DNA of 64,000 bases from positions 2,790,001-2,854,000 of the forward strand of contig CATNEN010000030.1 of assembly GCA_950097015.1 (NCBI GenBank). Reading direction: 5' to 3'. Positions 20,052 through 33,329 of the stretch are shown here, one piece after another (position 1 is the stretch's first letter; each line of letters opens with the position of its first letter). The notes under the pieces are model-generated. The model was not told the DNA's origin. It was given only the letters and a program-made list of their open reading frames with translations, and did no database searches. Origin of the DNA: Macrostomum hystrix (taxonomy: Eukaryota > Animalia > Platyhelminthes). The position numbers were made by a program, and so were the translations under genes.

Positions 20052-23000
20052 ATGGTAAGTCTCACTTCTACAATAATTACTTCAGCTTCACTTCTTCTGG
20101 AAAATTGGCTAGATATCAAGCAATAGAGTGGCTGGATATCAAGGTAGAAAGTAGCTAGATATCAAGAAAGAAAGTGGCTAGATGTCAAGGTAGAAAGAGG
20201 CTAGATGTCAAGGTAGAAAGAGGCTAGATGTCTAGGTAAAGAGAGAGGCTAGATGTCAAGGTAGAAAGTGGCTAGATGTCTAGGTAAAGAGAGAGGCTAG
20301 ATGTCAAGGTAGAAAGTGGCTAGATATCTAGGTAAAGAGAGAGGCTAGATGTCAAGGTAGAAAGTGGCTAGATGTCAAGGTAGAAAGAGGCTAGATGTCA
20401 AGGTAGAAAGTGGCTAGATGTCAAGGTAGAAAGTGGCTAGATATCAAGGTAGAAAGAGGCTAGATGTCAAGGTAGAAAGTGGCTAGATGTCAAGGTAGAA
20501 AGAGGCTAGATGTCAAGGTAGAAAGTGGCTAGATATCAAGGTAGAAAGAGGCTAGATGTCAAGGTAGAAAGTGGCTAGATGTCAAGGTAGAAAGTGGCTA
20601 GATATCAAGGTAGAAAGAGGCTAGATGTCAAGGTAGAAAGAGGCTAGATGTCAAGGTAGAAAGTGGCTAGATGTCAAGGTAGAAAGTGGCTAGATGTCAA
20701 GGTAGAAAGTGGCTAGATGTCTAGGTAAAGAGAGAGGCTAGATGTCAAGGTAGAAAGAGGCTAGATGTCAAGGTAGAAAGTGGCTAGATGTCAAGGTAGA
20801 AAGTGGCTAGATGTCTAGGTAAAGAGAGAGGCTAGATGTCAAGGTAGAAAGAGGCTAGATGTCAAGGTAGAAAGAGGCTAGATGTCAAGGTAGAAAGTGG
20901 CTAGATGTCAAGGTAGAAAGTGGCTAGATGTCAAGGTAGAAAGTGGCTAGATGTCTAGGTAAAGAGAGAGGCTAGATGTCAAGGTAGAAAGAGGCTAGAT
21001 GTCAAGGTAGAAAGTGGCTAGATGTCAAGGTAGAAAGTGGCTAGATGTCTAGGTAAAGAGAGAGGCTAGATGTCAAGGTAGAAAGAGGCTAGATGTCAAG
21101 GTAGAAAGTGGCTAGATGTCAAGGTAGAAAGTGGCTAGATGTCAAGGTAGAAAGTGGCTAGATATCAAGGTAGAAAGTGGCTAGATGTCAAGGTAGAAAG
21201 TGGCTAGATGTCAAGGTAGAAAGTGGCTAGATGTCAAGGTAGAAAGTGGCTAGATATCAAGGTAGAAATTGGCTAGATATCAAGGTAGAAAGTGGCTAGA
21301 TGTCAAGGTAGAAAGTGGCTAGATGTCAAGGTAGAAAGTGGCTAGATATCAAGGTAGAAAGTGGCTAGATATCAAGGTAGAAAGTGGCTAGATGTCAAGG
21401 TAGACAGTGGCTAGATTTCAAATTAGAAAGTGACTAGATGCCGGTAGTGCAGTTAAGTAAGGAACGTGGCCTCTTGGGCCGTATAATTAAGTGCTTATAT
21501 AGTCGCAGCCCCACAGTGTCTCCCGATGCGCAGCCCAGTCATGACCCTATTACGCAACACAAAGTGAATGGAAAGAGTGTTGCAGGTTGACAATAATGCT
21601 ATGCCAGCCTGGGAGGGAGAGGGTAGGTCAGTGCACTACAATGTCAAAGTAAAAAGTTGCTGGATGAAAAGCAAAAAATTGGACATGTAAAAAATTACCA
21701 ATCCCCAAATCATACCATAAACACTGTAAAACAGGACAGAGACGACGAGCAGCCCATTGTGAAGCCGGAGCCGCAGACCTACGTTGCCTACAAATCGCGA
21801 TGGTTTATACTCACCATCTACGGCCTTCTAATCACATTTCAAGGTTCTCTATGGAACACCTGGGGACCGTTGCATGACAACATGAAGCTGGCCTACGACT
21901 GGGACTCCGTCACATTCGGCCTGCTGCCATTCTGGGGTCCGTTCTGCTACGTCCTGTCCTTCCTGCCCTGGACGTGGTTCATGAACGCCAAAGGCCTGCG
22001 TCTACCCATACTGCTCAGCGCCGTCTTTGTCCTCCTCGGCTGCCTGGTGAAGGCCCCGGCGCCGCTGGTTAGCGACGATGCGTTCAGAATTCTGTGCCAC
22101 ATCTGCGGCTTCCTCAATGGCCTGGCCGCGCCCGCCCTGTTCACCACACCGCCGATGCTGGCCGCGCTCTGGTTTCCTAGAAACGAGCGGGTGACCGCCA
22201 CGGCCATCGGCGGCTCCTGCCAAGGACTGGCCATCGCTGCCTCTTTCATCATTGGTTGGTTCTCAAAATAAAAGGATTCCTAGCGAGTCCAGTATCATTT
22301 AGGGAGCTGCCGCATAGAGATGGCTTGAGGAAGCTCTTCGTGCAAATTACATTTGTACGAAACCCACAATGTCGGGGCAGAAGTGCAAAACCTGTGGTAG
22401 TCTATGTAAAAATAGGGGTGTACACAATTTGATGTCGAGAAGCTTTGGTACATGTAAATTCGTTGTTTGTGCGGTTGTCTGGCTGTAGCCTAGTGGTTAG
22501 TGTTAGAATCACAACTTAAAGATCGGGGGTTCGATTCCCGACTCCACTGGAAGAATTTGTGAGCTTTAGCACACTTAACTCTGCATTGCTTCAGTTCACC
22601 CAGGTGTTAAATGGAGGGTGGGTGTTGCGCCCTTAGTCCATGGACTGAACAGCCGTACGCGGCCTTCAGACGCGCCCGCGCAATAGCTGCGGCTGTGCTG
22701 TCGGCTGCACATCTGGCCCTATTGGGGCAGGTGTAATCAAAAAATTATTATACTGTTAATGTTGCGGAAAAAACTTTTAAAAGAATCTTAATCAGTCACT
22801 TGCGTAAATTGCATTTGTCAGGACCATTGTTCGTGCCTGAGGTAAACAACAGCACATTGGTAGACGCCAACTCAACCGACCATATTATTCAGTGAGTATA
22901 ACTGAGTTTTTCAGAGCACTATTTCGAATCGCGAAATAAATAATTTTAAAAGTCACCAGTTCAACATGATCAATCAAGATGAACTAAAAGCTAATTAATT

Positions 23001-23826
23001 TTAGCACAATTCGCACAGAAACATCAAGAGCCAAGTGTACGTGCTGAACTACTCCCAGCTGGGCATGGCACTGGCCATCTTCCTGGCCATTCTCGCCTAC
23101 TTTCCAAACCGGCCACCCACTCCGCCAGCCTTCTCGTGTGAAATCGAGCGCGTCAACCTGACCACGGGCCTGAAGTCGCTGTCGATTAACACCTGGCTAG
23201 TGGTGATGGCCTACGGTATCCCGCTGGGCATCTCGGCCGGGTTCAGCGCCGCATTCGACGTAAACGTGAGCCAGTACGGCATTGGCCAGACACAGGCCGG
23301 CTGGATGGGCTTCGTGGCGGTCATGAGCGGCACGGTCGTCAGCCTGCTGGCCGCCAGGCTCATCGACTGGTTTCCCAACGTCTCAATGAAATGGTTCAAC
23401 ATCGCCTTCCTTGGCATGGCCACCCTCTGCTACGTGTGGTTCACCCTAATATTCGACAAGAAACTGCCTGGTGACACCGCTTCGATCTACGTGGCCAACG
23501 TGCTGGCGAACACGGCGCTCTACGCATCGCTGCCAATTTTCTACGAGATGGCCTGCGAGTCGGCTTTCCCCATAGCCGAAGAGGTGCCCGCCATGCTCAT
23601 CACCAGCGTGAACTGCTTCTTCGCCAGCGCATTTCTGGCCCTATTCTTCCTGCCGCAGATTGGCACTCTGTGGATGAACTACGTCATGACCGGAGCCTGC
23701 GCATCCGCCGTGCCGCTGCTCATCTTCTTCAAAGAGGTGCACAACAGGCGCAACCTGGACCTCACCAGTCAGGTGCAGGCGGCCAGCTTTTCTGGCGACG
23801 GCGCCGCTGGAGGCCGCCTGCAGTGA
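20052..23826 (+). CDS. SLC49A4: MFS transporter, SLC49A4/DIRC2-like (FLVCR family), 4 exons, ~466 aa
   Basis: Exons 20052-20054 (ATG only, inferred), 21735-22254, 22822-22891, 23019-23826; phases consistent, total 1401 nt. Motifs RWFIL..QGSLWNTWGP, GLR, LNGLAAP, WFPRNERVTATAI; dileucine-like DEQPIV near the N-terminus. Confidence 0.88.
20107..21440. repeat. Minisatellite, 23-bp unit GTGGCTAGATGTCAAGGTAGAAA (25-bp variant), in SLC49A4 intron 1
   Basis: Tandem unit, ~55 copies. Confidence 0.97.
22481..22750 (+). mobile_element. tRNA-derived CORE-like SINE in SLC49A4 intron 2
   Basis: TAGCCTAGTGG A-box, GGTTCGATTCC B-box, shared body, ATT-rich tail. Confidence 0.85.
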
Positions 23827-23987: not shown

Positions 23988-24280
23988 GCCTTCTCATTGG
24001 CAATCCACAAGCCTTCTCATTGGCAATACACAAGCCTTCTCATTGGCAATCCACAAGCCTTCTCATTGGCAATACACAAGCCTTCTCATTGGCAATCCAC
24101 AAGCCTTCTCATTGGCAATCCACAAGCCTTCTCATTGGCAATCCACAAGCCTTCTCATTGGCAATCCACAAGCCTTCTCATTGGCAATCCACAAGCCTTC
24201 TCATTGGCAATCCACAAGCCTTCTCATTGGCAATCCACAAGCCTTCTCATTGGCAATCCAGTGCCTTCTCATTGTAATCC
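23988..24280. repeat. Minisatellite, 23-bp unit GCCTTCTCATTGGCAATCCACAA
   Basis: ~12 tandem copies. Confidence 0.96.
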
Positions 24281-24626
24281 ACAGATTCCACAAACATATA
24301 TTTTGTGATCTAAATTAACGTTCAGATACTGCAAAATTTTTAATCGATAGCTTCAAAATCAAATTGCACGTTATAAGTTTTCTATAGTTTTTTATGCACC
24401 TATTCTCTCCACATTTACTCAAATCATGATTTGCAAAGAATGCATCGCAATCTGCTGTGCTCAATATTAGCGATAATTCGGTTAATGAACCTGTAAAAAA
24501 TTTCTCGGAGAAAAAAAAGAATACAGAGGTACACAAAAAGCCACAAAAAGCATAATATTGTGTTGAATATAACTATCAAGTTCTGTGGACTATCTATGAT
24601 CTATAACTAATTGTCAGGCAGTGGTG

Positions 24627-25050
24627 TGTAGGAGGGAATCTACCTGTCAGAGAGAGATGCGTAGGAGGGAATCTACCTGTCAGAGAGAGATGCGTAGGAG
24701 GGAATCTACCTGTCAGAGAGAGATGCGTAGGAGGGAATCTACCTGTCAGAGAGAGATGCGTAGGAGGGAATCTACCTGTCAGAGAGAGATGCGTAGGAGG
24801 GAATCTACCTGTCAGAGAGAGATGCGTAGGAGGGAATCTACCTGTCAGAGAGAGATGCGTAGGAGGGAATCTACCTGTCAGAGAGAGATGCGTAGGAGGG
24901 AATCTGCCTGTCAGAGAGAGATGCGTAGGAGGGAATCTACCTGTCAGAGAGAGATGCGTAGGAGGGAATCTACCTGTCAGAGAGAGATGCGTAGGAGGGA
25001 ATCTACCTGTCAGAAAGAGGTGTATTGCGTAGAAGAGAATCTACTTGTCA
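24627..25050. repeat. Minisatellite, 33-bp unit GCGTAGGAGGGAATCTACCTGTCAGAGAGAGAT
   Basis: ~12 near-identical copies. Confidence 0.97.
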
Positions 25051-25562
25051 GGTGCATAGGTGCATAGGATGCATAGGATATGCGTAGGAGGTCAGACAGT
25101 GGTGCGTAGCACATCCAATGCGCGTCAAAAAGTTTTCGTTTACTTCTTGGAAAATTCTAAATGATTTCTTTTAACACAAAATTAATTTTGCCAAATCTTG
25201 TTTAATTTTTTCTCTCAAAGACCGCTGTACAAGAGTCTAGATGCCAGACTATATTTTCTTTAAAAAAAATACGTTTACAATACAGAAAACCAAATTTAAT
25301 TTTTTCGTATATGGCATAGCAGATATAAGTACTAACGATTTCTTTTCGTAGGAGCAACAGAAGATGACAAAAAATATAGCAATGTAGCTCTTCATTTTGT
25401 AGCCCCGGATGCAGCGATACAGCGATTTTTTCCAGTAACAATGAACAAGCGATTTTGAGGATATGAATTCTTTCTCAGCTAGCATTTATTTATCTGTCTA
25501 TCCGTGTACATAGAAAACTAGCGAGACTAGCGTAGTCTGAGTGAGAATCGGTTGAGCACACT

Positions 25563-25967
25563 TTAGTTCTGGCGCATTTGTCGCCTGAGCATGCCGACAA
25601 TCTCCATTTCAATGAAGCTGCTAATAGCCGGGTCGTTAACCTCCTTGGCCACGCGGGACATCACTTCGGCTTTCAGCTGGTCGCAGTCTGGCGCGGAGGA
25701 GGCTGCCATCTGATGGCGCAGGACGGCGGCCGCGTACTGAACCCAGACACAGTCCAGGCAGCCAGATTCACAGCACAGCCCGATTGGCGGCGGCGGTGGC
25801 GGCTGCATCGGCGGCTGCATCGGCGGCTGCATCGGCGGCTGCCGATGTAAAACGCCGGTAGAATCGTCAGAGGCCGACTTGGAAGACGATGAATAAAACA
25901 CTGTGGGGCAGCGGCGCGACGACTTTGAACAGCGAAGAATCACTGCCCGTAGGCTGGCCGCGCTAAG
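25563..25967 (-). CDS. OXLD1: Oxidoreductase-like domain-containing protein 1; the exon lacks its own start codon
   Basis: PPPPIGLCCESGCLDCVWVQYA..DPAISSFIEMEI matches the OXLD1 CCxSGCxxCVW motif. Exon opens at a strong acceptor (CTTGTACTTTTCCAG) in phase 0: LSAASLRAVILRCSKSSRR. Confidence 0.85.
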   Translation of the reverse strand, partial: LSAASLRAVILRCSKSSRRCPTVFYSSSSKSASDDSTGVLHRQPPMQPPMQPPMQPPPPPPIGLCCESGCLDCVWVQYAAAVLRHQMAASSAPDCDQLKAEVMSRVAKEVNDPAISSFIEMEIVGMLRRQMRQN

Positions 25968-26325
25968 CTGGAAAAGTACAAGTTAAGGACTCAGGGACTG
26001 AATAGGAGAATGTCAAACAAAACTGTCTTTAATTGGAAAATATTCAACAAAATTAAGAATATCAATATTTTGTACAAATGATATACACTAGTTTATTACA
26101 TCTATCAAAGTGTAAAAGTACACAGCTGTAAAGAAACTAACTTCAGACGTGTGTAAAATGATAATACAAGAAAGCTAAACATGTATTTCCATTTTTTTAA
26201 ATCTGATTTCTACAAACTATATGTAACACACTTGTATAGAGATTTCTAACAATTTTTTACCACAAGCTCAGTTGTTAAGATAGTTTTATGTAAATTATCT
26301 TTTATTACACATGCACTGATGTGCA

Positions 26326-26638
26326 GCTGGATGTAGCCTAGTGGTTAGAGCATCGAACTCACGACTTGAATGTCGAGGGCTCAATTCCCGACTCCACTGG
26401 AACAATTTGTGTCCTTCAGCAAGACACTCAACTCTGCATTGCTTCAGTCCACCCAGCTGTTAAATGGGTACCAGCATTAGCTGGGATAATTGAAGGTGGG
26501 TATGGCGCCCCCCCAGTCCATGGACTGATCAGCTGTATGCAGCTTTCAGATGCGCCGCCCAATAACTGCGGCTATGCTGTTGGCTGCACATCTGACCCAA
26601 TGGGGGCAATTGAAATCAATTATTTTAATTATAATTAT
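26326..26638 (+). mobile_element. tRNA-derived CORE-like SINE, full length
   Basis: A/B boxes, TGTGTCCTTCAGCAAGACACTCAAC..CCACCCAGCTGTTAAATGGGTACC; body shared with the 22481 copy. Confidence 0.85.
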
Positions 26639-26987
26639 GTGCAGCTGACAGCATAGTTGCAGCTATTGTGCCATAAATCTGAAGGCTCAGCTACATATAG
26701 CTGTTCAGTCCATGGACTGGTGCAACACTAAACCCACAATTAATAGCTGTAGCTTATTTTGGTACCCATTATAAAAAATTGAACAGAAACAACACAGAGT
26801 TACTTGTTTCCAGTTAAATGGCATAAATTGTTCCAGTGGAGCATCAAACACCTGACCATCAATTGTTGTGAGTTAAGACTTCGACACTCTTGGTATACAT
26901 CAAATAGCCACAAAAAACTACCACAAAGCAAAATGTCCAGAAAACATAAGGGCCACTCACAAGAGTTGACTACTATTGAATTATAAC
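26525..26987 (+). repeat. Left copy of a ~450-bp direct duplication flanking the hAT element
   Basis: Aligns end to end with 29481-29910, roughly 80-85% identity by eye. Confidence 0.85.
26636..26775 (-). mobile_element. Inverted partial copy of the same SINE (tail-to-tail)
   Basis: Reverse complement matches CCAGTCCATGGACTGAxCAGCT..GCTGCACAT of the adjacent copy. Confidence 0.75.
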
Positions 26988-29480
26988 CAGTGTCACCACC
27001 ACTGCGCTATTGCTGGTTGCCTGCGGTATTGCTCTATTTTCAGCGCCATTTAATGTATCTGCGCTATTTTTGCATTGCACTGTAATTTTTTCATTTTAAA
27101 TGAAATATGCAAAATGAAGTATGCAAAAATACTTTAAAACATCGTGTTAATTGAGTTATATTGCCTTATTTATCTATATACTAAAAATGATATATTCTAA
27201 AAGTTGTCTGCCCCCATTTCTCCCAAACACTTCAAACGCAGCTCAATACTTAGGGTAAAATTTATGTCGATGTCGATGCCTCATTTTTATTAGCTGGTCT
27301 ATAATGCCGGTCAGCTGGTCTATAACTCCGCAAAATTGCAGCCCAAAACTTGATGTCCTCCAAATCAAGTCCAGCTGCTAATGCCAATCATCAGACTACT
27401 TGGAATGATGAATGTCTTAATAAGCTCGACAAAAATGGGCAGCGAATTGGCGATTGGTGCCGCCATGGTGTCTGCCCTGGCAACGCGTTTTGCAATCTCT
27501 GTTCGAAAACTTTCTCTATCAAGCAGCACGGAATCACAGCGGTGAATCAACATGCTGATGGCAGCAAGCACAAACAACAGGCTAACATCAGCACTAGGAC
27601 CAAAGACTCAAGTGGTCATCCAATGAACATAAGGCATTTCTTCCCAATGCAGCAGCAGCAGCAAGATCAGCAACCCGCCAACGCCGCTAATGAACAGCCA
27701 GTCAGAACGGAAGACTTTCGCGAAAAAGTTTTTGATGCAGCAATGGAAGCAAGTCTCCGCTTCGCAGCTGCGGTAGCAAAAAAGGACTTCTCATTCTGAG
27801 CCATGGACGAGCTGTCAGAGCTCATGCCAGTCGCTTTCTCTGACAGTAAGATTGCGGAAAAGTTTACATGCGCTCGAAGTAAAACTGCCTATCTGATTAA
27901 CGAGTCTCTAGCGACACACGCCAAAAAGGACATGGCGCACACATTGAGGGACTCATTCTTCTTGATTCAGCTTGACGAGAGCACAAAGGGAAATCGATAA
28001 TGGTTGGTGGTTGTGGCGCGCGTCTTCCACCAGCAGCGCATAAAAGGTACAGCTGCTATTTTTAGGTGATGAGGAACTTGTCGCCGGTACCGCTGAAAAT
28101 ATGAAAAACATCGTAGATGAGCTTCTTCGTAAAGCCAATCTGCCTTCTGAGCGCGTAATTTCTGTCATGACGGATTCCTGCTATGCTATTAGAGATAAGA
28201 TTTAAAGCAACTAACCAATCACTTTTATTTGTCGGTTTCGGTGCTCTTTTGCTCATCATATTTTTAACAACAAAACTTTTGTATTTTTAGGGAGCAAAAA
28301 TGGACTTGTCACTCGCCTAAAACGTGAAATGCCCCATCTTGCTGACGTTGGTGGATGCAGTTTGCACCACGTGCAAAGAGCTTGCAATACGCTGTTTGAG
28401 CTTTTGATCTGGGTGGCGAAGCGAAGGGCCTGATGGACGATCTCTACAATTTTTTCCGATTTGAAGGCCGTCTTCACGATTTTAGAGAATTGCAGCGAAG
28501 TATGGAGGATGCCGAACACGTTTTCCTGCGGCGCGTTGACACGCGATGGATTCAAATCCTCCAAGTAGTGAGACGCCTTCTCGAGCAGTGGAAGGTACTA
28601 GTTAACTTTGGCAAGGCTACGCCTGACTTCTTGGCAAATGTAAGAGCACAGCGAATCAAGCAGGCCCTGAACAACAACGTGCTTGCTTGCCTACAATTCC
28701 TAGAGAAAGTCTTGCCGCGTTGCGACAAGTTTGAGAAGGTGTTTCAGCTTGAGTCAACCCAAGTCCATCATCTTGCTGCAAGTCTTGATGAACTTCTCAG
28801 CGATATTTTGCTGAGCTTTCTTCGCGGCGAGGTGGTGCAGGACTGCTCAACTGTTGGCTAGATTGCCGAAAAGGCCAAGGACCGGGCAAATCAAGTTGCG
28901 AATAAGAGTTGGTAATCGGAAATAATACACACAACAAAGCCGAACGCGAAAAGGCTGACGAGGAGGAGCGAGAGCGGCGAAGGAATGCGGAAGAGGTGCA
29001 GGCTGAGCAGCACAAAATTAACGAGGCGCGTAAAAAAGCCTTCTGGAAGCAGAGAAGGCCGAGGCTCAGCTTCGCAAGCGGATGAGTTCCAGCAGCAACA
29101 GCAAGACTGGTGGCAGTGGCTTAAACGCACCCGCTCCCAAAAAGTTCAAGTAGAAGAATAGAGAATCAATTTAACACTTCCCATCGCAGTGACAATTGCA
29201 GTAATCTTTTACTTTATCACCATAAGTGTTTTACATGTTTTACACGTTTTTCTTTGCTAAAGCAGCCTGTCTTCTTCTGTCTTGTTAAGTCGAAATAGGC
29301 CCCTTTTTGAAGTTTTGAACTCCAAATAAAATATCAATAACTCAACATCTTATAGTTGTATAAATTCTAACTTTATACCTAATTTTACTGTGTCCAAAAG
29401 GTATTTGTTGTTTGATTTTGCCTGCTCCATTTTTTTCGTGCTGCGTTAATTATTTCTTGTAATTTTTTGTGGTCACACTG
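26988..29480 (+). mobile_element. Decayed hAT-superfamily DNA transposon
   Basis: 12-bp TIRs CAGTGTCACCAC / GTGGTCACACTG (1 mismatch). Transposase pseudogene with BED-like FCNLC..H..H, LDEST, MTDSC, CSLHH and DTRW motifs; in-frame stops at 27797 and 27998; 96-nt intron 28195-28290 with its donor mutated to AT. Confidence 0.88.
27350..28861 (+). pseudogene. hAT transposase pseudogene
   Basis: Stops, frameshifts and a broken splice donor; catalytic C-terminal/dimerisation region not recognisable. Confidence 0.85.
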
Positions 29481-29910
29481 CTGAACAGCTGTATGCAGCC
29501 TTCAGATGCGCCACGCAATAGCTGCGGCTGTGCTGTTGGCTGCACATCTGACCCAATTAGGGCAGATGTAATCAATTATTATTATTATTAATTATGTGCA
29601 GCTGACAGCACAGCTGCAGCTATTGTGCCATGCATCTGAAAGCTCAGCTACATATAGCTGTTCAGTCTATGGACTGGTACAACACTAAACTCACAATTAT
29701 TAGCTCTAGCTTATTAGGGTACCCATTAAAATTTAACTGAGGCAACACAATGTGTCAAGCATCAAACACCAGACCTTCAAGTTGTGACTTGGACTTGGAT
29801 ACTCTTGGTAGGCCTACACATCAAATGGCCACAAATAAAACAGTCACGAAGCAAAATGACCAGAAAACATAATGGCCACTCACAAGAGTTGACTACTATT
29901 GAATTATAAC
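29481..29910 (+). repeat. Right copy of the direct duplication (contains the SINE foldback)
   Basis: Begins on the base after the right TIR and ends in the same GAATTATAAC that precedes the left TIR. Confidence 0.85.
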
Positions 29911-31979
29911 TTCAAAAAGCAAAAGGATCACCCAAATATTCAGAATTTTTTCCTAACAACATTTCCTTTATAAATTCCTTAATAAATAAATTGGCAAGAA
30001 TATTTTTATGCTACAAAAAAATAAATTAGTAATAAGCCTATTGGTAAAAGTAAGGCTTAAAAGTGTGAATTTGTGGTCATTTTTTGTGGCCATTATGTCA
30101 AGTTGCCTTTTTGACATGGAAGGGGATATATACCAGTGCAACAACACCTTTTTAGCTATACAGCAAGCTACTTATAAAGGAATATAGTACCCAGTATTAT
30201 TATGTTGTTTTTATGCTCTCTTAATAATAGCTAAAAGCTTTTGAAACGAACCATTAACTTTTTTTCTAATACATTAATTAATCAAAGTACAAATGCCTAT
30301 TCAAAATAGAAAGCTACATACAAAGGCACCGAATTCAAGCAAGTGTAAGACGTGTAAGATAAGTAAAAAAATAATGCAAAATAGTGACGACACCAAATAG
30401 GCCTATTCTGTTTCTTGTAGGCCTAGCAAAGGAAAAACATAAATTATTTATAAAGTTATAAACCCATCTAAAACTTTATTTGATATCAACTTCATCCATA
30501 AATTAATGTTTGATGTCACAACAGGATGGATAGAAGCATGTAAGCTGGCCCAAGTTTTAAAGGACAGCTACTCTTTCAGTCTACTTCATTAGTAAGTCTT
30601 AAGTCTAGTTCGAAAAATACTTTTATCTTAGAAAAAACTAATTTCAACTAAAAATGCTAACTGATTATAACAATTTTATTCCGACAGCAGAATATTTCAA
30701 TCTATTGCCCAACACTACTTAAATATATTTTAGAAAAACCCAGTTTAAATAAGTTCTGCATATTTTAAAGTTCTATCTAAATAAAACACATTTGTAAAAG
30801 ACTACAGCAGTATTTCAGTTTTTACTGAGAAGATTCAGAAGAGAATCAAGACGTGCTGCTCCTCTCCCTTTAAAGTCCGGGATGGCGCTTCAAACCCTGG
30901 AGCTCTAGCATTTCTCAGCTTCGCTGATCTTCGCTGTTGTGCGCCCTTTAAAAGCAGCCTAGACAGGCTTGTCCAGATGTGCTGTTAAATTAAATAGCTA
31001 CGTCTTGAGCGCACATGTAATCTTGCTTTTTGGACCCGTTATATTCTGCTGTGATTTAACTTTAAAATAATGGCCAAAGGATCCAGCAGAGATTAGACCC
31101 ACATTGTCTTGTATTCTCTTGTATTGTATTAACAAATTAGTCAAACTTTTAAAATGTACCCGTACAGTGGAAGCTGTTCGACAAAATGTTGATTATATAT
31201 AATGCTCGAAGATCAAAGTTTAATATAGCTTTAATTTTTGACAGATTACTTATAGTTGAGTCACATGGACAAGATACGGATGTGCGCATTGCAATGGAGA
31301 CTAATAACACTAGGCTTATTGGTCACGAACGAATTAAAGAAAGAAGAATGCTTTATTTTTCTTTTAATTGATGCTATATACTACAATATGACGCAGAAAA
31401 CAGAGCAAAAATTTGTGCTCACATGATTTTTTACCCATAAGTCATTATATTTGGATCTCAATGCTAAGGTGTTATTATTATTTTGACCGGGACTAATAAT
31501 AGGAACAATAATAGTAATAATAAAGTATGGATAACGTGAGCGCAAAAGAATATTCTGTGAAATTCAGAAAGCAACAAAGAAAGGAAAATTTAGAGCTGAT
31601 GTAACGTATACGCGATTAATTAAAAATATAATTATGTACACAAAAGAGACTAAATTACATAGAATTTGACGGTGAAACTACGTGAGCCGAGTATAGTTAG
31701 TGGCCTCTTCTGTGTTTGTGCTAAAAAATTCCCACCTAAAAGTTAGACTGGGAATACATAATTGGGAGAATGATAATAAAGAATTCAACATTCACAGAAA
31801 ACAAGAAACGCAAATATATAATGCAATCGTAAACAAAGAAAGCATGATTACAAACTATATTATTACACTGATTCAGATATAGACGCCGATAACAGAAAAT
31901 CACGCACGACACAGTCTCGCCGTAGTCATGCAGTTAAAAATAACAGACTACATTAATAAAATAATTAGCATTACATCAT

Positions 31980-32693
31980 TTACTCGTCGCCATCTTCATC
32001 GTCTTCGACGGCATCGTCGTGGTTGGCGGCGCTGTCATCTGGCCTGGGGCGCTTGGTCGGTACGAAAGTGCCTTGTCTGAACTGGTTCATTTCCTGTGGG
32101 TTGAAGGGTAAGTGGGTAACAGAAGCGTTACAAAAATGCGACTGAGTTACTGTAAGTAGTAATATAGTAATGACAACCGTTTTTATTAATAAAATGCTTA
32201 GAGAAATGATTAGCAAGCTTACGTCTTCATAGCGCTGTTTATCGCGAACTGCGGCCGCCTCGTATTTAGGACGATCCTTGCAGGTTTCCCACATTTTTCC
32301 AAGCTCTTTCGCGACGTCGCTAACACGCCACTCTGGATGATCGTCCCGAATCCGCTGGCGGTGCTCGTCAGAGAACAGAAAGAATGCCGTCAGGGCGCGC
32401 TTGGGCATGTTCGGATCCTTTGGCTTCTTGCGCTTCTTGCCCTTGCTGCCATCAGCAGGGACGTAATCGTCCATCTCGCGGTTGTACCTATCTTTGTCCC
32501 GGGACGCCATGTCTTCAAATCGTTTTTTCTCCTTGGGGTTCATTGTTTTCCACTTCTCGGCGCATTTCTTGGAGAACTCAGCGAAGACAACAGTCTCCTC
32601 GGGATGCTTCTTTTTGTGCTCTTCCCGAATGACCTGAACGAAACACGCGTAGGCGCTCATAGGCCCCTTGGGCTTCATCTTGTCTTTCACCAT
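31980..32693 (-). CDS. HMGB: HMGB/DSP1-like protein with two HMG boxes and an acidic tail, 194 aa
   Basis: Exons 32693-32223 and 32093-31980. Box [25 protein letters not shown]; box [16 protein letters not shown]; tail EDDEDGDE. Probable 5'UTR intron (acceptor ~32704, donor ~33162). Confidence 0.95.
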
Positions 32694-33329
32694 CCTTAAG
32701 TACCTATTGAAATAGTTGCGGTTTTGAAGATATGTCATTATACTATACTCTAGATTAGTTACCATCAAAACTAATATATAGAATCTAGACGTAGAATTAA
32801 GTCATAAGAGATAGGCCTAGTTAATACAGTCGAAGCATACCAGCAAAACGATGATGCAGTATTTTTATTTAGCACACGTACTATTGATACTCTTGGGATG
32901 GAAGAATGGAAGAATGGATGGAAGAATTGAACATCAGTCATCAGTACAGCAATGTCCTAATGTCCCAGCTTTATTTCGAAACTTAACATTAATTAATACT
33001 AATATGATACAGATGTTTGATATTTAATTTACATAACACTTTCAATGACAACTGTCTAAACTCAATGTATCTGCATAAGGCGGTGTATCAGCATTCAGCA
33101 ATACATACGTCATACGGCAATGAACAGTGTAAGTTAAATAAATAGACCAGCAATCGCGCTTACCGAAGCTTCAGAAATATAGGTGTAGGCCAATGCAGCT
33201 AACACAGTAGAAGGCTCTCTGTGTCTTCCTAGATTCAGACAGTGTAAAGGGCCGAGCAATGCTAAACATAGGCCGCATTGGAAAAGCTTTGGAAGAATTT
33301 AGCACTGAGAAGGTTTGCGGCACTTTCTA

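What the first reader, a model, noticed from the sequence alone, without database searches (positions are those of the whole stretch)
25563..25990. OXLD1 has no start codon of its own and may take its AUG from the flatworm spliced leader
Seen: the exon opens at a strong acceptor (TTAACTTGTACTTTTCCAG|, 25967) in phase 0. It reads LSAASLRAVILRCSKSSRR.., an Arg/Ser-rich, acid-free stretch resembling a mitochondrial presequence. The first in-frame ATG lies after this stretch (PPMQ). I found no convincing ATG-bearing upstream exon in the TE-rich DNA up to HMGB. Established: platyhelminth spliced leaders end in AUG, which can act as the initiator. Inference: trans-splicing gives M-LSAASLRA.., so mitochondrial targeting would depend on SL addition. 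HMGB lies upstream on the same strand, so an HMGB-OXLD1 polycistron expanded by TE insertions is possible.
Basis: partly seen in the sequence, partly recalled or inferred. Interest (0 to 1): 0.7.

Follow-up and report, generated by a model that had tools for sequence, protein, structure and literature searches.

The report
OXLD1 start codon from spliced leader
In the flatworm Macrostomum hystrix, the small mitochondrial-type gene OXLD1 has no start codon of its own at its 5' end; transcripts show that the trans-spliced leader's final AUG sits directly in frame with it, a mechanism known in flatworms since 2006.

Summary
The minus-strand exon 25566-25967 encodes a 134-codon Oxidored-like (PF09791) protein. 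It opens at a TTCCAG acceptor, has an in-frame TAA five codons upstream, and has no ATG before codon 46 of the exon.

Contigs from three public runs (two studies) end at 25968 and continue with 23 letters. Together with the G at 25968, these are the last 24 nt of the Macrostomum spliced leader (..TTGCATG). The mRNA therefore reads AUG-CUU-AGC.., giving M-LSAASLRAVILRC...

The genome is the M. hystrix assembly and carries at least 20 SL RNA genes ending ATG|GTAAG. The M. lignano orthologue also begins right after an AG, and its exon has no Met before the conserved domain.

Three steps are inferred, not shown: use of the SL AUG for translation, mitochondrial import, and dependence of import on trans-splicing. 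They rest on the basic, acid-free N-terminus and on the cleavable presequence of human OXLD1.

The HMGB-OXLD1 operon idea is not supported. The spacer is 6 kb with at least 2.4 kb of unique DNA, no RNA contigs lie on its single-copy parts below 31249, and M. lignano shows no synteny.

The mechanism is known, and this scan has already reported it for other genes in this genome (POP5, mt-TyrRS). This is a sound but ordinary new example.

The parts
25968..25986 (-). Polypyrimidine tract plus AG trans-splice acceptor (TTAACTTGTACTTTTCCAG). It fits the M. lignano trans-acceptor motif [T/C]TNCAG. The G at 25968 is identical to the last G of the SL.
25983..25985 (-). In-frame TAA five codons upstream of the acceptor. 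It closes the frame in unspliced RNA.
25566..25967 (-). Single coding exon of 134 codons (stop at 25563-25565). With the SL AUG it gives a 135-aa OXLD1-like precursor.
25833..25967 (-). The 45 codons before the first genomic ATG. The first 33 are acid-free, Arg/Lys/Ser-rich and presequence-like. GC is 58%, like the CDS, against 28% upstream and 35% in the 3' UTR.
25798..25842 (-). 12-bp repeat encoding (PPMQ)n. It carries the only in-frame ATGs ahead of the domain (25832, 25820, 25808). Copy number differs between runs, and M. lignano has no Met here.
25692..25802 (-). Oxidored-like domain (PF09791), residues 56-92 of the exon translation, with the motif CCESGCLDCVWVQY.
25250..25562 (-). 3' UTR. 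RNA contigs continue at least to 25250, the end of the stretch laid. There is an AATAAA near 25495. The true 3' end was not determined.
25968..31979 (-). Outron and spacer up to the HMGB stop codon. It holds a high-copy ~310-bp repeat (26329-26873, 29481-29731), low-copy DNA with plus-strand ORFs (26990-29480), and single-copy DNA (25968-26328, 29911-31979).
31980..32768 (-). Upstream neighbour HMGB (two HMG boxes), same strand.

Best explanation
The gene is the Macrostomum hystrix OXLD1 homologue, made of one coding exon. Its primary transcript starts somewhere upstream and is processed by spliced-leader trans-splicing at the acceptor 25968/25967. The 35-nt SL ends in AUG, and this AUG lands directly in front of codon CUU in phase 0. 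The first AUG of the mature mRNA therefore opens the only long ORF, M-LSAASLRAVILRCSKSSRRC.., of 135 aa. The SL-initiated N-terminus is a basic, acid-free stretch that most likely acts as a cleavable mitochondrial presequence. Without trans-splicing, the frame is closed by a TAA upstream and no presequence-bearing protein can be made. Shown here: the SL-exon junction in RNA, the frame, the SL RNA genes, and the domain. Inferred: initiation at the SL AUG, mitochondrial import, and monocistronic origin.
For: 1. Junction: contigs in X15, X16 and X1 (two studies) run from the exon to 25968 and continue with ATGCAATAAATTGAGTCTTCGCA on the plus strand. Its reverse complement plus the G at 25968 equals the last 24 nt of the published SL, CGGTCTCTTACTGCGAAGACTCAATTTATTGCATG (SL from PMC8629364).
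2. Frame: the first ATG of the contig translates to MLSAASLRAVIL.
3. RNA origin: the same runs have no contig on the single-copy outron (26050-26249) or on 29911-31249, so they behave as RNA. The genome holds only one copy of the gene, so no SL-bearing retrocopy explains the junction.
4. SL genes: the genome has 20 exact SL RNA genes with ..TTGCATG|GTAAGAC and a Sm-like AUAUUUUUAG.
5. [quoted passage not shown]
6. Orthologue: M. lignano P0001 is annotated as partial, begins immediately after an AG (..ATCCAG|TTGGTG) in phase 0, and its first Met in the exon lies after the domain.
7. Presequence: the N-terminus has its first acidic residue at 35, 6 basic residues in the first 34, and a maximum helical hydrophobic moment of 0.65.
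8. Human OXLD1 is imported into mitochondria and processed in a membrane-potential-dependent way (PMC8664129).
9. Precedent: the flatworm SL AUG works as an initiator. In S. mansoni 28% of SL transcripts are in frame and more than 40 cDNAs need it (Cheng et al. 2006, pmid 16230357, as cited in PMC9851317 and PMC12582326).
Against: There is no protein-level evidence. All runs were Logan contigs, not raw reads, so minor isoforms (cis-spliced or unspliced) cannot be excluded and nothing can be quantified. Three in-frame ATGs (codons 46, 50 and 54 of the exon) lie ahead of the domain and could also be used, because the SL AUG must be leaky for many other trans-spliced mRNAs. No dedicated targeting predictor was available. 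The N-terminus is poorly conserved with M. lignano, which is usual for presequences but gives no constraint evidence. The open frame of 45 codons is not significant by itself. The Pfam score is only just above its cut-off.
Confidence: 0.82

Rival explanations
1. The protein starts at one of the genomic methionines in the PPMQ repeat (25832, 25820 or 25808). The stretch from the acceptor to there is then just a 5' UTR that happens to be open.
For: These are the first genomic ATGs, all in frame 0 and ahead of the Oxidored-like domain. A 45-codon stop-free run arises in 30% of shuffles. The SL AUG has to be bypassed on many other SL-mRNAs.
Against: The SL AUG is the first AUG of the mRNA and is in frame. 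The M. lignano orthologue has no Met at this place or anywhere before the domain in the exon. The Met-bearing repeat varies in copy number between runs. The stretch has CDS-like GC of 58%, against 35% in the 3' UTR. It is presequence-like, and human OXLD1 needs a cleavable presequence.
Confidence: 0.08
2. A cis-spliced upstream exon with its own ATG supplies the start, and the SL form is a minor or alternative product.
For: In parasitic flatworms, acceptors are often shared between cis- and trans-splicing (PMC12582326). Contigs drop rare variants.
Against: In three runs the contig passes the junction straight into the SL, with no branch. No joint links 25967/25968 to any place in 25968-31249. 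No upstream ATG within 530 nt opens an ORF that reaches the acceptor.
Confidence: 0.05
3. HMGB and OXLD1 form an SL-resolved operon whose spacer was inflated by transposon insertions.
For: The two genes are adjacent on the same strand and the downstream gene is SL trans-spliced. In M. lignano, repeats are known to inflate operon spacers (PMC8629364). Part of the spacer is a high-copy repeat.
Against: The spacer is 6012 bp, and at least 2430 bp of it is single-copy. That is well above the repeat-adjusted 1-kb threshold used for M. lignano. No RNA contig lies on the unique spacer parts below 31249. No HMGB match lies within 8 kb upstream of either M. lignano copy. About 60% of SL trans-spliced genes in M. 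lignano are not in operons.
Confidence: 0.08

Closest known systems
Flatworm mRNAs that use the spliced leader's 3'-terminal AUG as initiator (Cheng, Cohen, Ndegwa & Davis 2006, J Biol Chem 281:733, pmid 16230357; Schistosoma mansoni)
   Same: The SL ends in AUG, is joined in phase 0 to an exon with no ATG of its own at its 5' end, and opens the main ORF.
   Different: This is a different species (a free-living macrostomorph) and a different gene. Here only the RNA junction is shown, not translation.
Echinococcus granulosus thioredoxin glutathione reductase, where trans-spliced alternative mRNAs encode mitochondrial and cytosolic variants (Agorio et al. 2003, pmid 12538593, cited in PMC12582326)
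   Same: Trans-splicing decides whether a flatworm protein carries a mitochondrial leader.
   Different: In that case alternative mRNAs give two isoforms. Here a single SL form is seen, and the presequence is opened by the SL AUG itself.
Other SL-AUG genes noted by this scan in the same genome (POP5, mitochondrial TyrRS, a thimet-type peptidase)
   Same: Same genome, same SL, and the same ATG-less first exon at a phase-0 acceptor.
   Different: Different genes. I did not re-test them.
Human OXLD1 (C17orf90), a mitochondrial protein with an Oxidored-like domain
   Same: A small protein with one PF09791 domain behind an N-terminal targeting stretch. The human protein is imported and cleaved (PMC8664129).
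   Different: The human gene has its own ATG. Orthology rests on the Pfam domain and architecture only, and no reciprocal search was run.

Membership tests
SL-AUG-initiated flatworm mRNA | The organism has an SL RNA whose leader ends in AUG, followed by a GU donor | tested here: met
   20 exact genomic copies of ..TTGCATG|GTAAGAC with a Sm-like site. Identical to the published M. lignano SL.
SL-AUG-initiated flatworm mRNA | The SL is joined to this mRNA at the proposed acceptor | tested here: met
   Contigs in X15, X16 and X1 (two studies) carry 24 nt of SL joined at 25968/25967.
SL-AUG-initiated flatworm mRNA | The SL AUG is in frame with the main ORF, with no stop between | tested here: met
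   ATG|CTT AGC GCG translates to MLSAASLRAVIL.., open for 135 codons.
SL-AUG-initiated flatworm mRNA | No genomic ATG can supply the full-length N-terminus | tested here: met
   A TAA lies five codons upstream. No upstream ATG ORF reaches the acceptor. The first exon ATG is at codon 46.
SL-AUG-initiated flatworm mRNA | Translation actually starts at the SL AUG | not testable with these tools
   Needs ribosome profiling, N-terminal proteomics or reporter assays.
OXLD1 / Oxidored-like (PF09791) | Pfam PF09791 match above the gathering score | tested here: met
   27.7 bits against a cut-off of 24, E 2.3e-6, residues 56-92. The nearest Atlas clusters are all PF09791. The M. lignano homologue carries PF09791.
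OXLD1 / Oxidored-like (PF09791) | One-to-one orthology with human OXLD1 | not tested
   No reciprocal search was run, because the large protein searches were spared once the family scan had settled the family.
Mitochondrial presequence protein | Basic, acid-free, amphiphilic N-terminus | tested here: met
   First acidic residue at 35, 6 R/K in the first 34, muH 0.65, shuffle fraction 0.0045.
Mitochondrial presequence protein | Import into and cleavage in mitochondria | not testable with these tools
   Shown only for human OXLD1 (PMC8664129).
SL-resolved operon HMGB>OXLD1 | Repeat-adjusted intergenic distance of at most 1 kb (criterion of PMC8629364) | tested here: not met
   At least 2430 bp of the 6012-bp spacer is single-copy.
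SL-resolved operon HMGB>OXLD1 | Polycistronic RNA across the spacer | tested here: inconclusive
   No contigs lie on the unique spacer parts below 31249 in four runs. Contigs cannot show absence of a short-lived precursor.
SL-resolved operon HMGB>OXLD1 | Gene pair conserved in a relative | tested here: not met
   No HMGB tblastn hit in 8 kb (L007) or 4.4 kb (L008) upstream of the M. lignano orthologue.

The most novel reading that the evidence does not exclude
SL-donated start codons may be concentrated on mitochondrial precursor proteins in Macrostomum. OXLD1 here is one case, and this scan's unchecked notes list mt-TyrRS and COQ7 in the same genome. Under this reading trans-splicing is an obligatory step for mitochondrial targeting of a gene set. 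For OXLD1, leaky scanning past the weak-context SL AUG to the copy-number-variable PPMQ methionines could then give a second, non-mitochondrial isoform.
Probability: 0.15. Interest if true: 0.55.

Novelty: new member of a known kind. Interest (0 to 1): 0.28.

Why it matters
The case shows with transcript evidence that gene models in Macrostomum genomes can be truncated or marked partial when the SL's AUG is trimmed or ignored. The M. lignano orthologue is annotated as partial for this reason, and the M. hystrix paper left the ATG on reads to avoid such problems. A truncated model would also hide the organelle-targeting signal. For annotation and for targeting predictions in flatworms, ATG-less first exons at phase-0 trans-acceptors should be completed with the SL methionine. 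Biologically it is one more example of a known mechanism.

Tried and rejected
- Rfam scan of an SL RNA gene: no curated family matched, only a chance snoRNA hit at E 0.79. It adds nothing.
- Pfam on the plus-strand ORFs in the spacer, 27350-27799 and 28433-28861: no transposase family. I therefore do not call this part a transposon, and it is low-copy.
- PDB sequence search: only a weak hit (E 0.024) to a chain named Oxidoreductase-like domain-containing protein in 7zm7, 7zmb and 7zmg. It is too weak to build on.
- Word-based protein search: it found only the M. lignano homologue. I did not run the large HMMER search or further word searches, because the family scan had settled the family.
- The stop-free 45-codon run as evidence of coding: rejected, since 30% of shuffles reach it.
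- GTG at 25943 as a start (listed by the bacterial-code ORF tool): irrelevant for a eukaryotic mRNA whose first AUG is in frame.
No spliced multi-exon model had to be joined, because the gene has a single coding exon.

Full report
**What is there**

On the minus strand the sequence reads ..TTAACTTGTACTTTTCCAG|CTTAGCGCGGCCAGC... From 25967 one frame is open for 134 codons, to the stop at 25563-25565. It reads LSAASLRAVILRCSKSSRRCPTVFYSSSSKSASDDSTGVLHRQ(PPMQ)3PPPPPPIGLCCESGCLDCVWVQY...

- Five codons upstream of the acceptor there is an in-frame TAA (25983-25985).
- Within 530 nt upstream, no ATG opens an ORF that reaches the acceptor.
- The first genomic ATG in frame is at 25832, inside a 12-bp x3.8 repeat.
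- Pfam finds the Oxidored-like domain PF09791 at residues 56-92, with 27.7 bits against a cut-off of 24.
- The nearest ESM-Atlas clusters are small animal proteins that carry only this domain.
- GC jumps from 28% upstream to 58% in the exon, and falls to 35% in the 3' UTR.

**Which organism**

The window's assembly has 220,453,370 bases in 42 contigs. This is exactly the Macrostomum hystrix assembly of Table 1 in PMC10468722. [quoted passage not shown]

The published M. lignano SL is CGGTCTCTTACTGCGAAGACTCAATTTATTGCATG (PMC8629364). The window's genome holds 20 exact copies of ..GAAGACTCAATTTATTGCATG|GTAAGAC. They have a Sm-like AUAUUUUUAG downstream and are arranged in arrays spaced about 11.6 kb apart. 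No Rfam family covers this RNA.

**The decisive test**

One run search and one read-laying run were allowed. I laid Logan contigs of four runs on 25250-31249.

- In X15 and X16 (study P12) and in X1 (study P1), a contig covers the exon up to 25968 and then runs on for 23 letters that fit nothing here: ATGCAATAAATTGAGTCTTCGCA on the plus strand.
- Reverse-complemented, and joined to the G at 25968, these letters are the last 24 nt of the published SL. That G is shared between the acceptor AG and the SL's final G.
- The contig's first ATG translates to MLSAASLRAVIL.
- No joint links 25967/25968 to any other place of the 6-kb stretch.

The same runs have no contig on the single-copy outron (26050-26249) or on the single-copy 29911-31249, so they behave as transcriptomes. 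The gene is single-copy in the genome, so an SL-bearing retrocopy does not explain the junction.

The limits of this test are that contigs show presence, not absence, and cannot be used for quantification.

**Comparison with M. lignano**

The only relative found by the word search is M. lignano BOX15_Mlig031694g1. It is 134 aa, is annotated 'partial', and is 58-60% identical.

- In both genomic copies its CDS starts immediately after an AG (..GCATCCAG|TTGGTGATT..) in phase 0. This is what an SL-trimmed transcript model would give.
- In that protein there is no Met between the acceptor and the conserved domain. The first is in ..GVMARV.., behind the domain. An internal start therefore cannot give a functional protein there.
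- M. lignano does have an in-frame genomic ATG seven codons upstream of the acceptor (MLRASIQ|LVIRH..). M. hystrix has a TAA in the equivalent stretch.
- The PPMQ methionines of M. hystrix are not conserved. The repeat that carries them differs in length between runs: the X1 contig is 24 letters shorter and the X3 contig 12 letters shorter.

**How it most likely works**

- Shown: the mature mRNA begins with the SL, whose AUG is the first AUG and opens the 135-codon ORF.
- Established elsewhere: the flatworm SL AUG can act as the initiator. [quoted passage not shown] 2006, pmid 16230357, as summarised in PMC9851317 and PMC12582326).
- Inferred: translation starts at the SL AUG and the N-terminus is a mitochondrial presequence.

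The inference rests on two points. The first acidic residue is at position 35, there are six Arg/Lys in the first 34 residues, and the helical hydrophobic moment reaches 0.65. Only 0.45% of shuffles of the protein give such an N-terminus. Human OXLD1 is imported into mitochondria and cleaved in a membrane-potential-dependent way (PMC8664129) and co-localises with TOMM20 (PMC12413873).

A link between trans-splicing and a mitochondrial leader has a precedent in Echinococcus TGR (Agorio et al. 2003, cited in PMC12582326).

**The operon idea**

HMGB (two HMG boxes) ends at 31980 on the same strand, 6012 bp upstream.

- A ~310-bp element at 26329-26638 is very high-copy. It gave 4472 first-look candidates at about 90% identity. 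An inverted partner follows at 26637-26873 and a further copy lies at 29481-29731.
- 26990-29480 is low-copy, and its ORFs have no Pfam transposase hit.
- 25968-26328 and 29911-31979 are single-copy.
- At least 2.4 kb therefore stays unique. The M. lignano study used a repeat-adjusted threshold of 1 kb, with a mode near 100 bp.
- No RNA contig lies on the unique spacer parts below 31249.
- There is no HMGB match within 8 kb upstream of the M. lignano orthologue.

The operon is not excluded, because outrons and precursors are short-lived, but nothing supports it.

**Novelty**

The mechanism has been known since 2006. The M. hystrix genome paper mentions the SL's ATG as a start codon. This scan's earlier notes report the same arrangement for POP5, mt-TyrRS and a peptidase in this genome. 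I did not re-test those notes.

This is a well-supported new example, useful mainly for annotation. The M. lignano orthologue is filed as 'partial' for exactly this reason.

One reading remains open. Several of the cases noted so far are mitochondrial proteins, so SL-donated starts might be enriched on presequence proteins. For OXLD1, leaky scanning to the variable PPMQ methionines could give a second isoform. Neither was tested.

The gene has one coding exon, so no spliced model had to be joined. The large HMMER search and further word searches were not run, because the family scan had settled the family.

Noticed in passing
G000 contigs C15, C17, C42 (loci L002-L006), also C1 (L001) and C37: SL RNA genes lie in tandem arrays spaced about 11.6-11.7 kb apart. 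20 copies are exact, and the 3-kb flanks are identical between several units. What else the 11.6-kb unit carries was not examined.
   Followed up: partly
G000 C7:8556418, C7:8561406, C8:629355, C24:365104, C25:3941598, C38:27887531: Six SL 3' ends are followed by GGC or GCT instead of the GT donor.
   Followed up: no
window 25798-25842: The 12-bp repeat encoding PPMQ varies in length between runs: the contig is 24 letters shorter in X1 and 12 shorter in X3. The number of internal methionines is therefore polymorphic.
   Followed up: partly
window 26329-26873 and 29481-29731: A ~310-bp very high-copy element (thousands of candidates, about 90% alike) is present as a head-to-head pair plus a third copy. 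It is heavily represented in the RNA runs (summed depth above 1000). It is SINE- or MITE-like and was not classified.
   Followed up: partly
window 26525-26987 and 29481-29910: A direct repeat of about 460 bp (88-90% identity, spacing 2957 bp) brackets low-copy DNA with plus-strand ORFs (27350-28861) that have no Pfam hit. One partial second copy lies on contig C39.
   Followed up: partly
L007 7980-8000 (M. lignano): The M. lignano orthologue has an in-frame genomic ATG seven codons upstream of its acceptor (MLRASIQ|LVIRH..). An untrans-spliced transcript could therefore still encode a full protein there, unlike in M. hystrix.
   Followed up: partly
window 21657-23826 (+) and L007 16377-16405: An MFS-transporter-like gene lies tail-to-tail with OXLD1. 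The M. lignano locus also has a convergent MFS_1 gene downstream, so microsynteny may be conserved on that side.
   Followed up: no
window 24000-24283 and 24628-25019: Two clean tandem arrays (23 bp x12.4 and 33 bp x11.9, 95-99% matches) lie between OXLD1 and the MFS-like gene.
   Followed up: no
window 25511-25967: All nine ATGs from the acceptor to 25511 are in frame 0. Eight lie in the coding exon and the ninth lies about 50 nt into the 3' UTR. The first out-of-frame ATG is at 25485.
   Followed up: no
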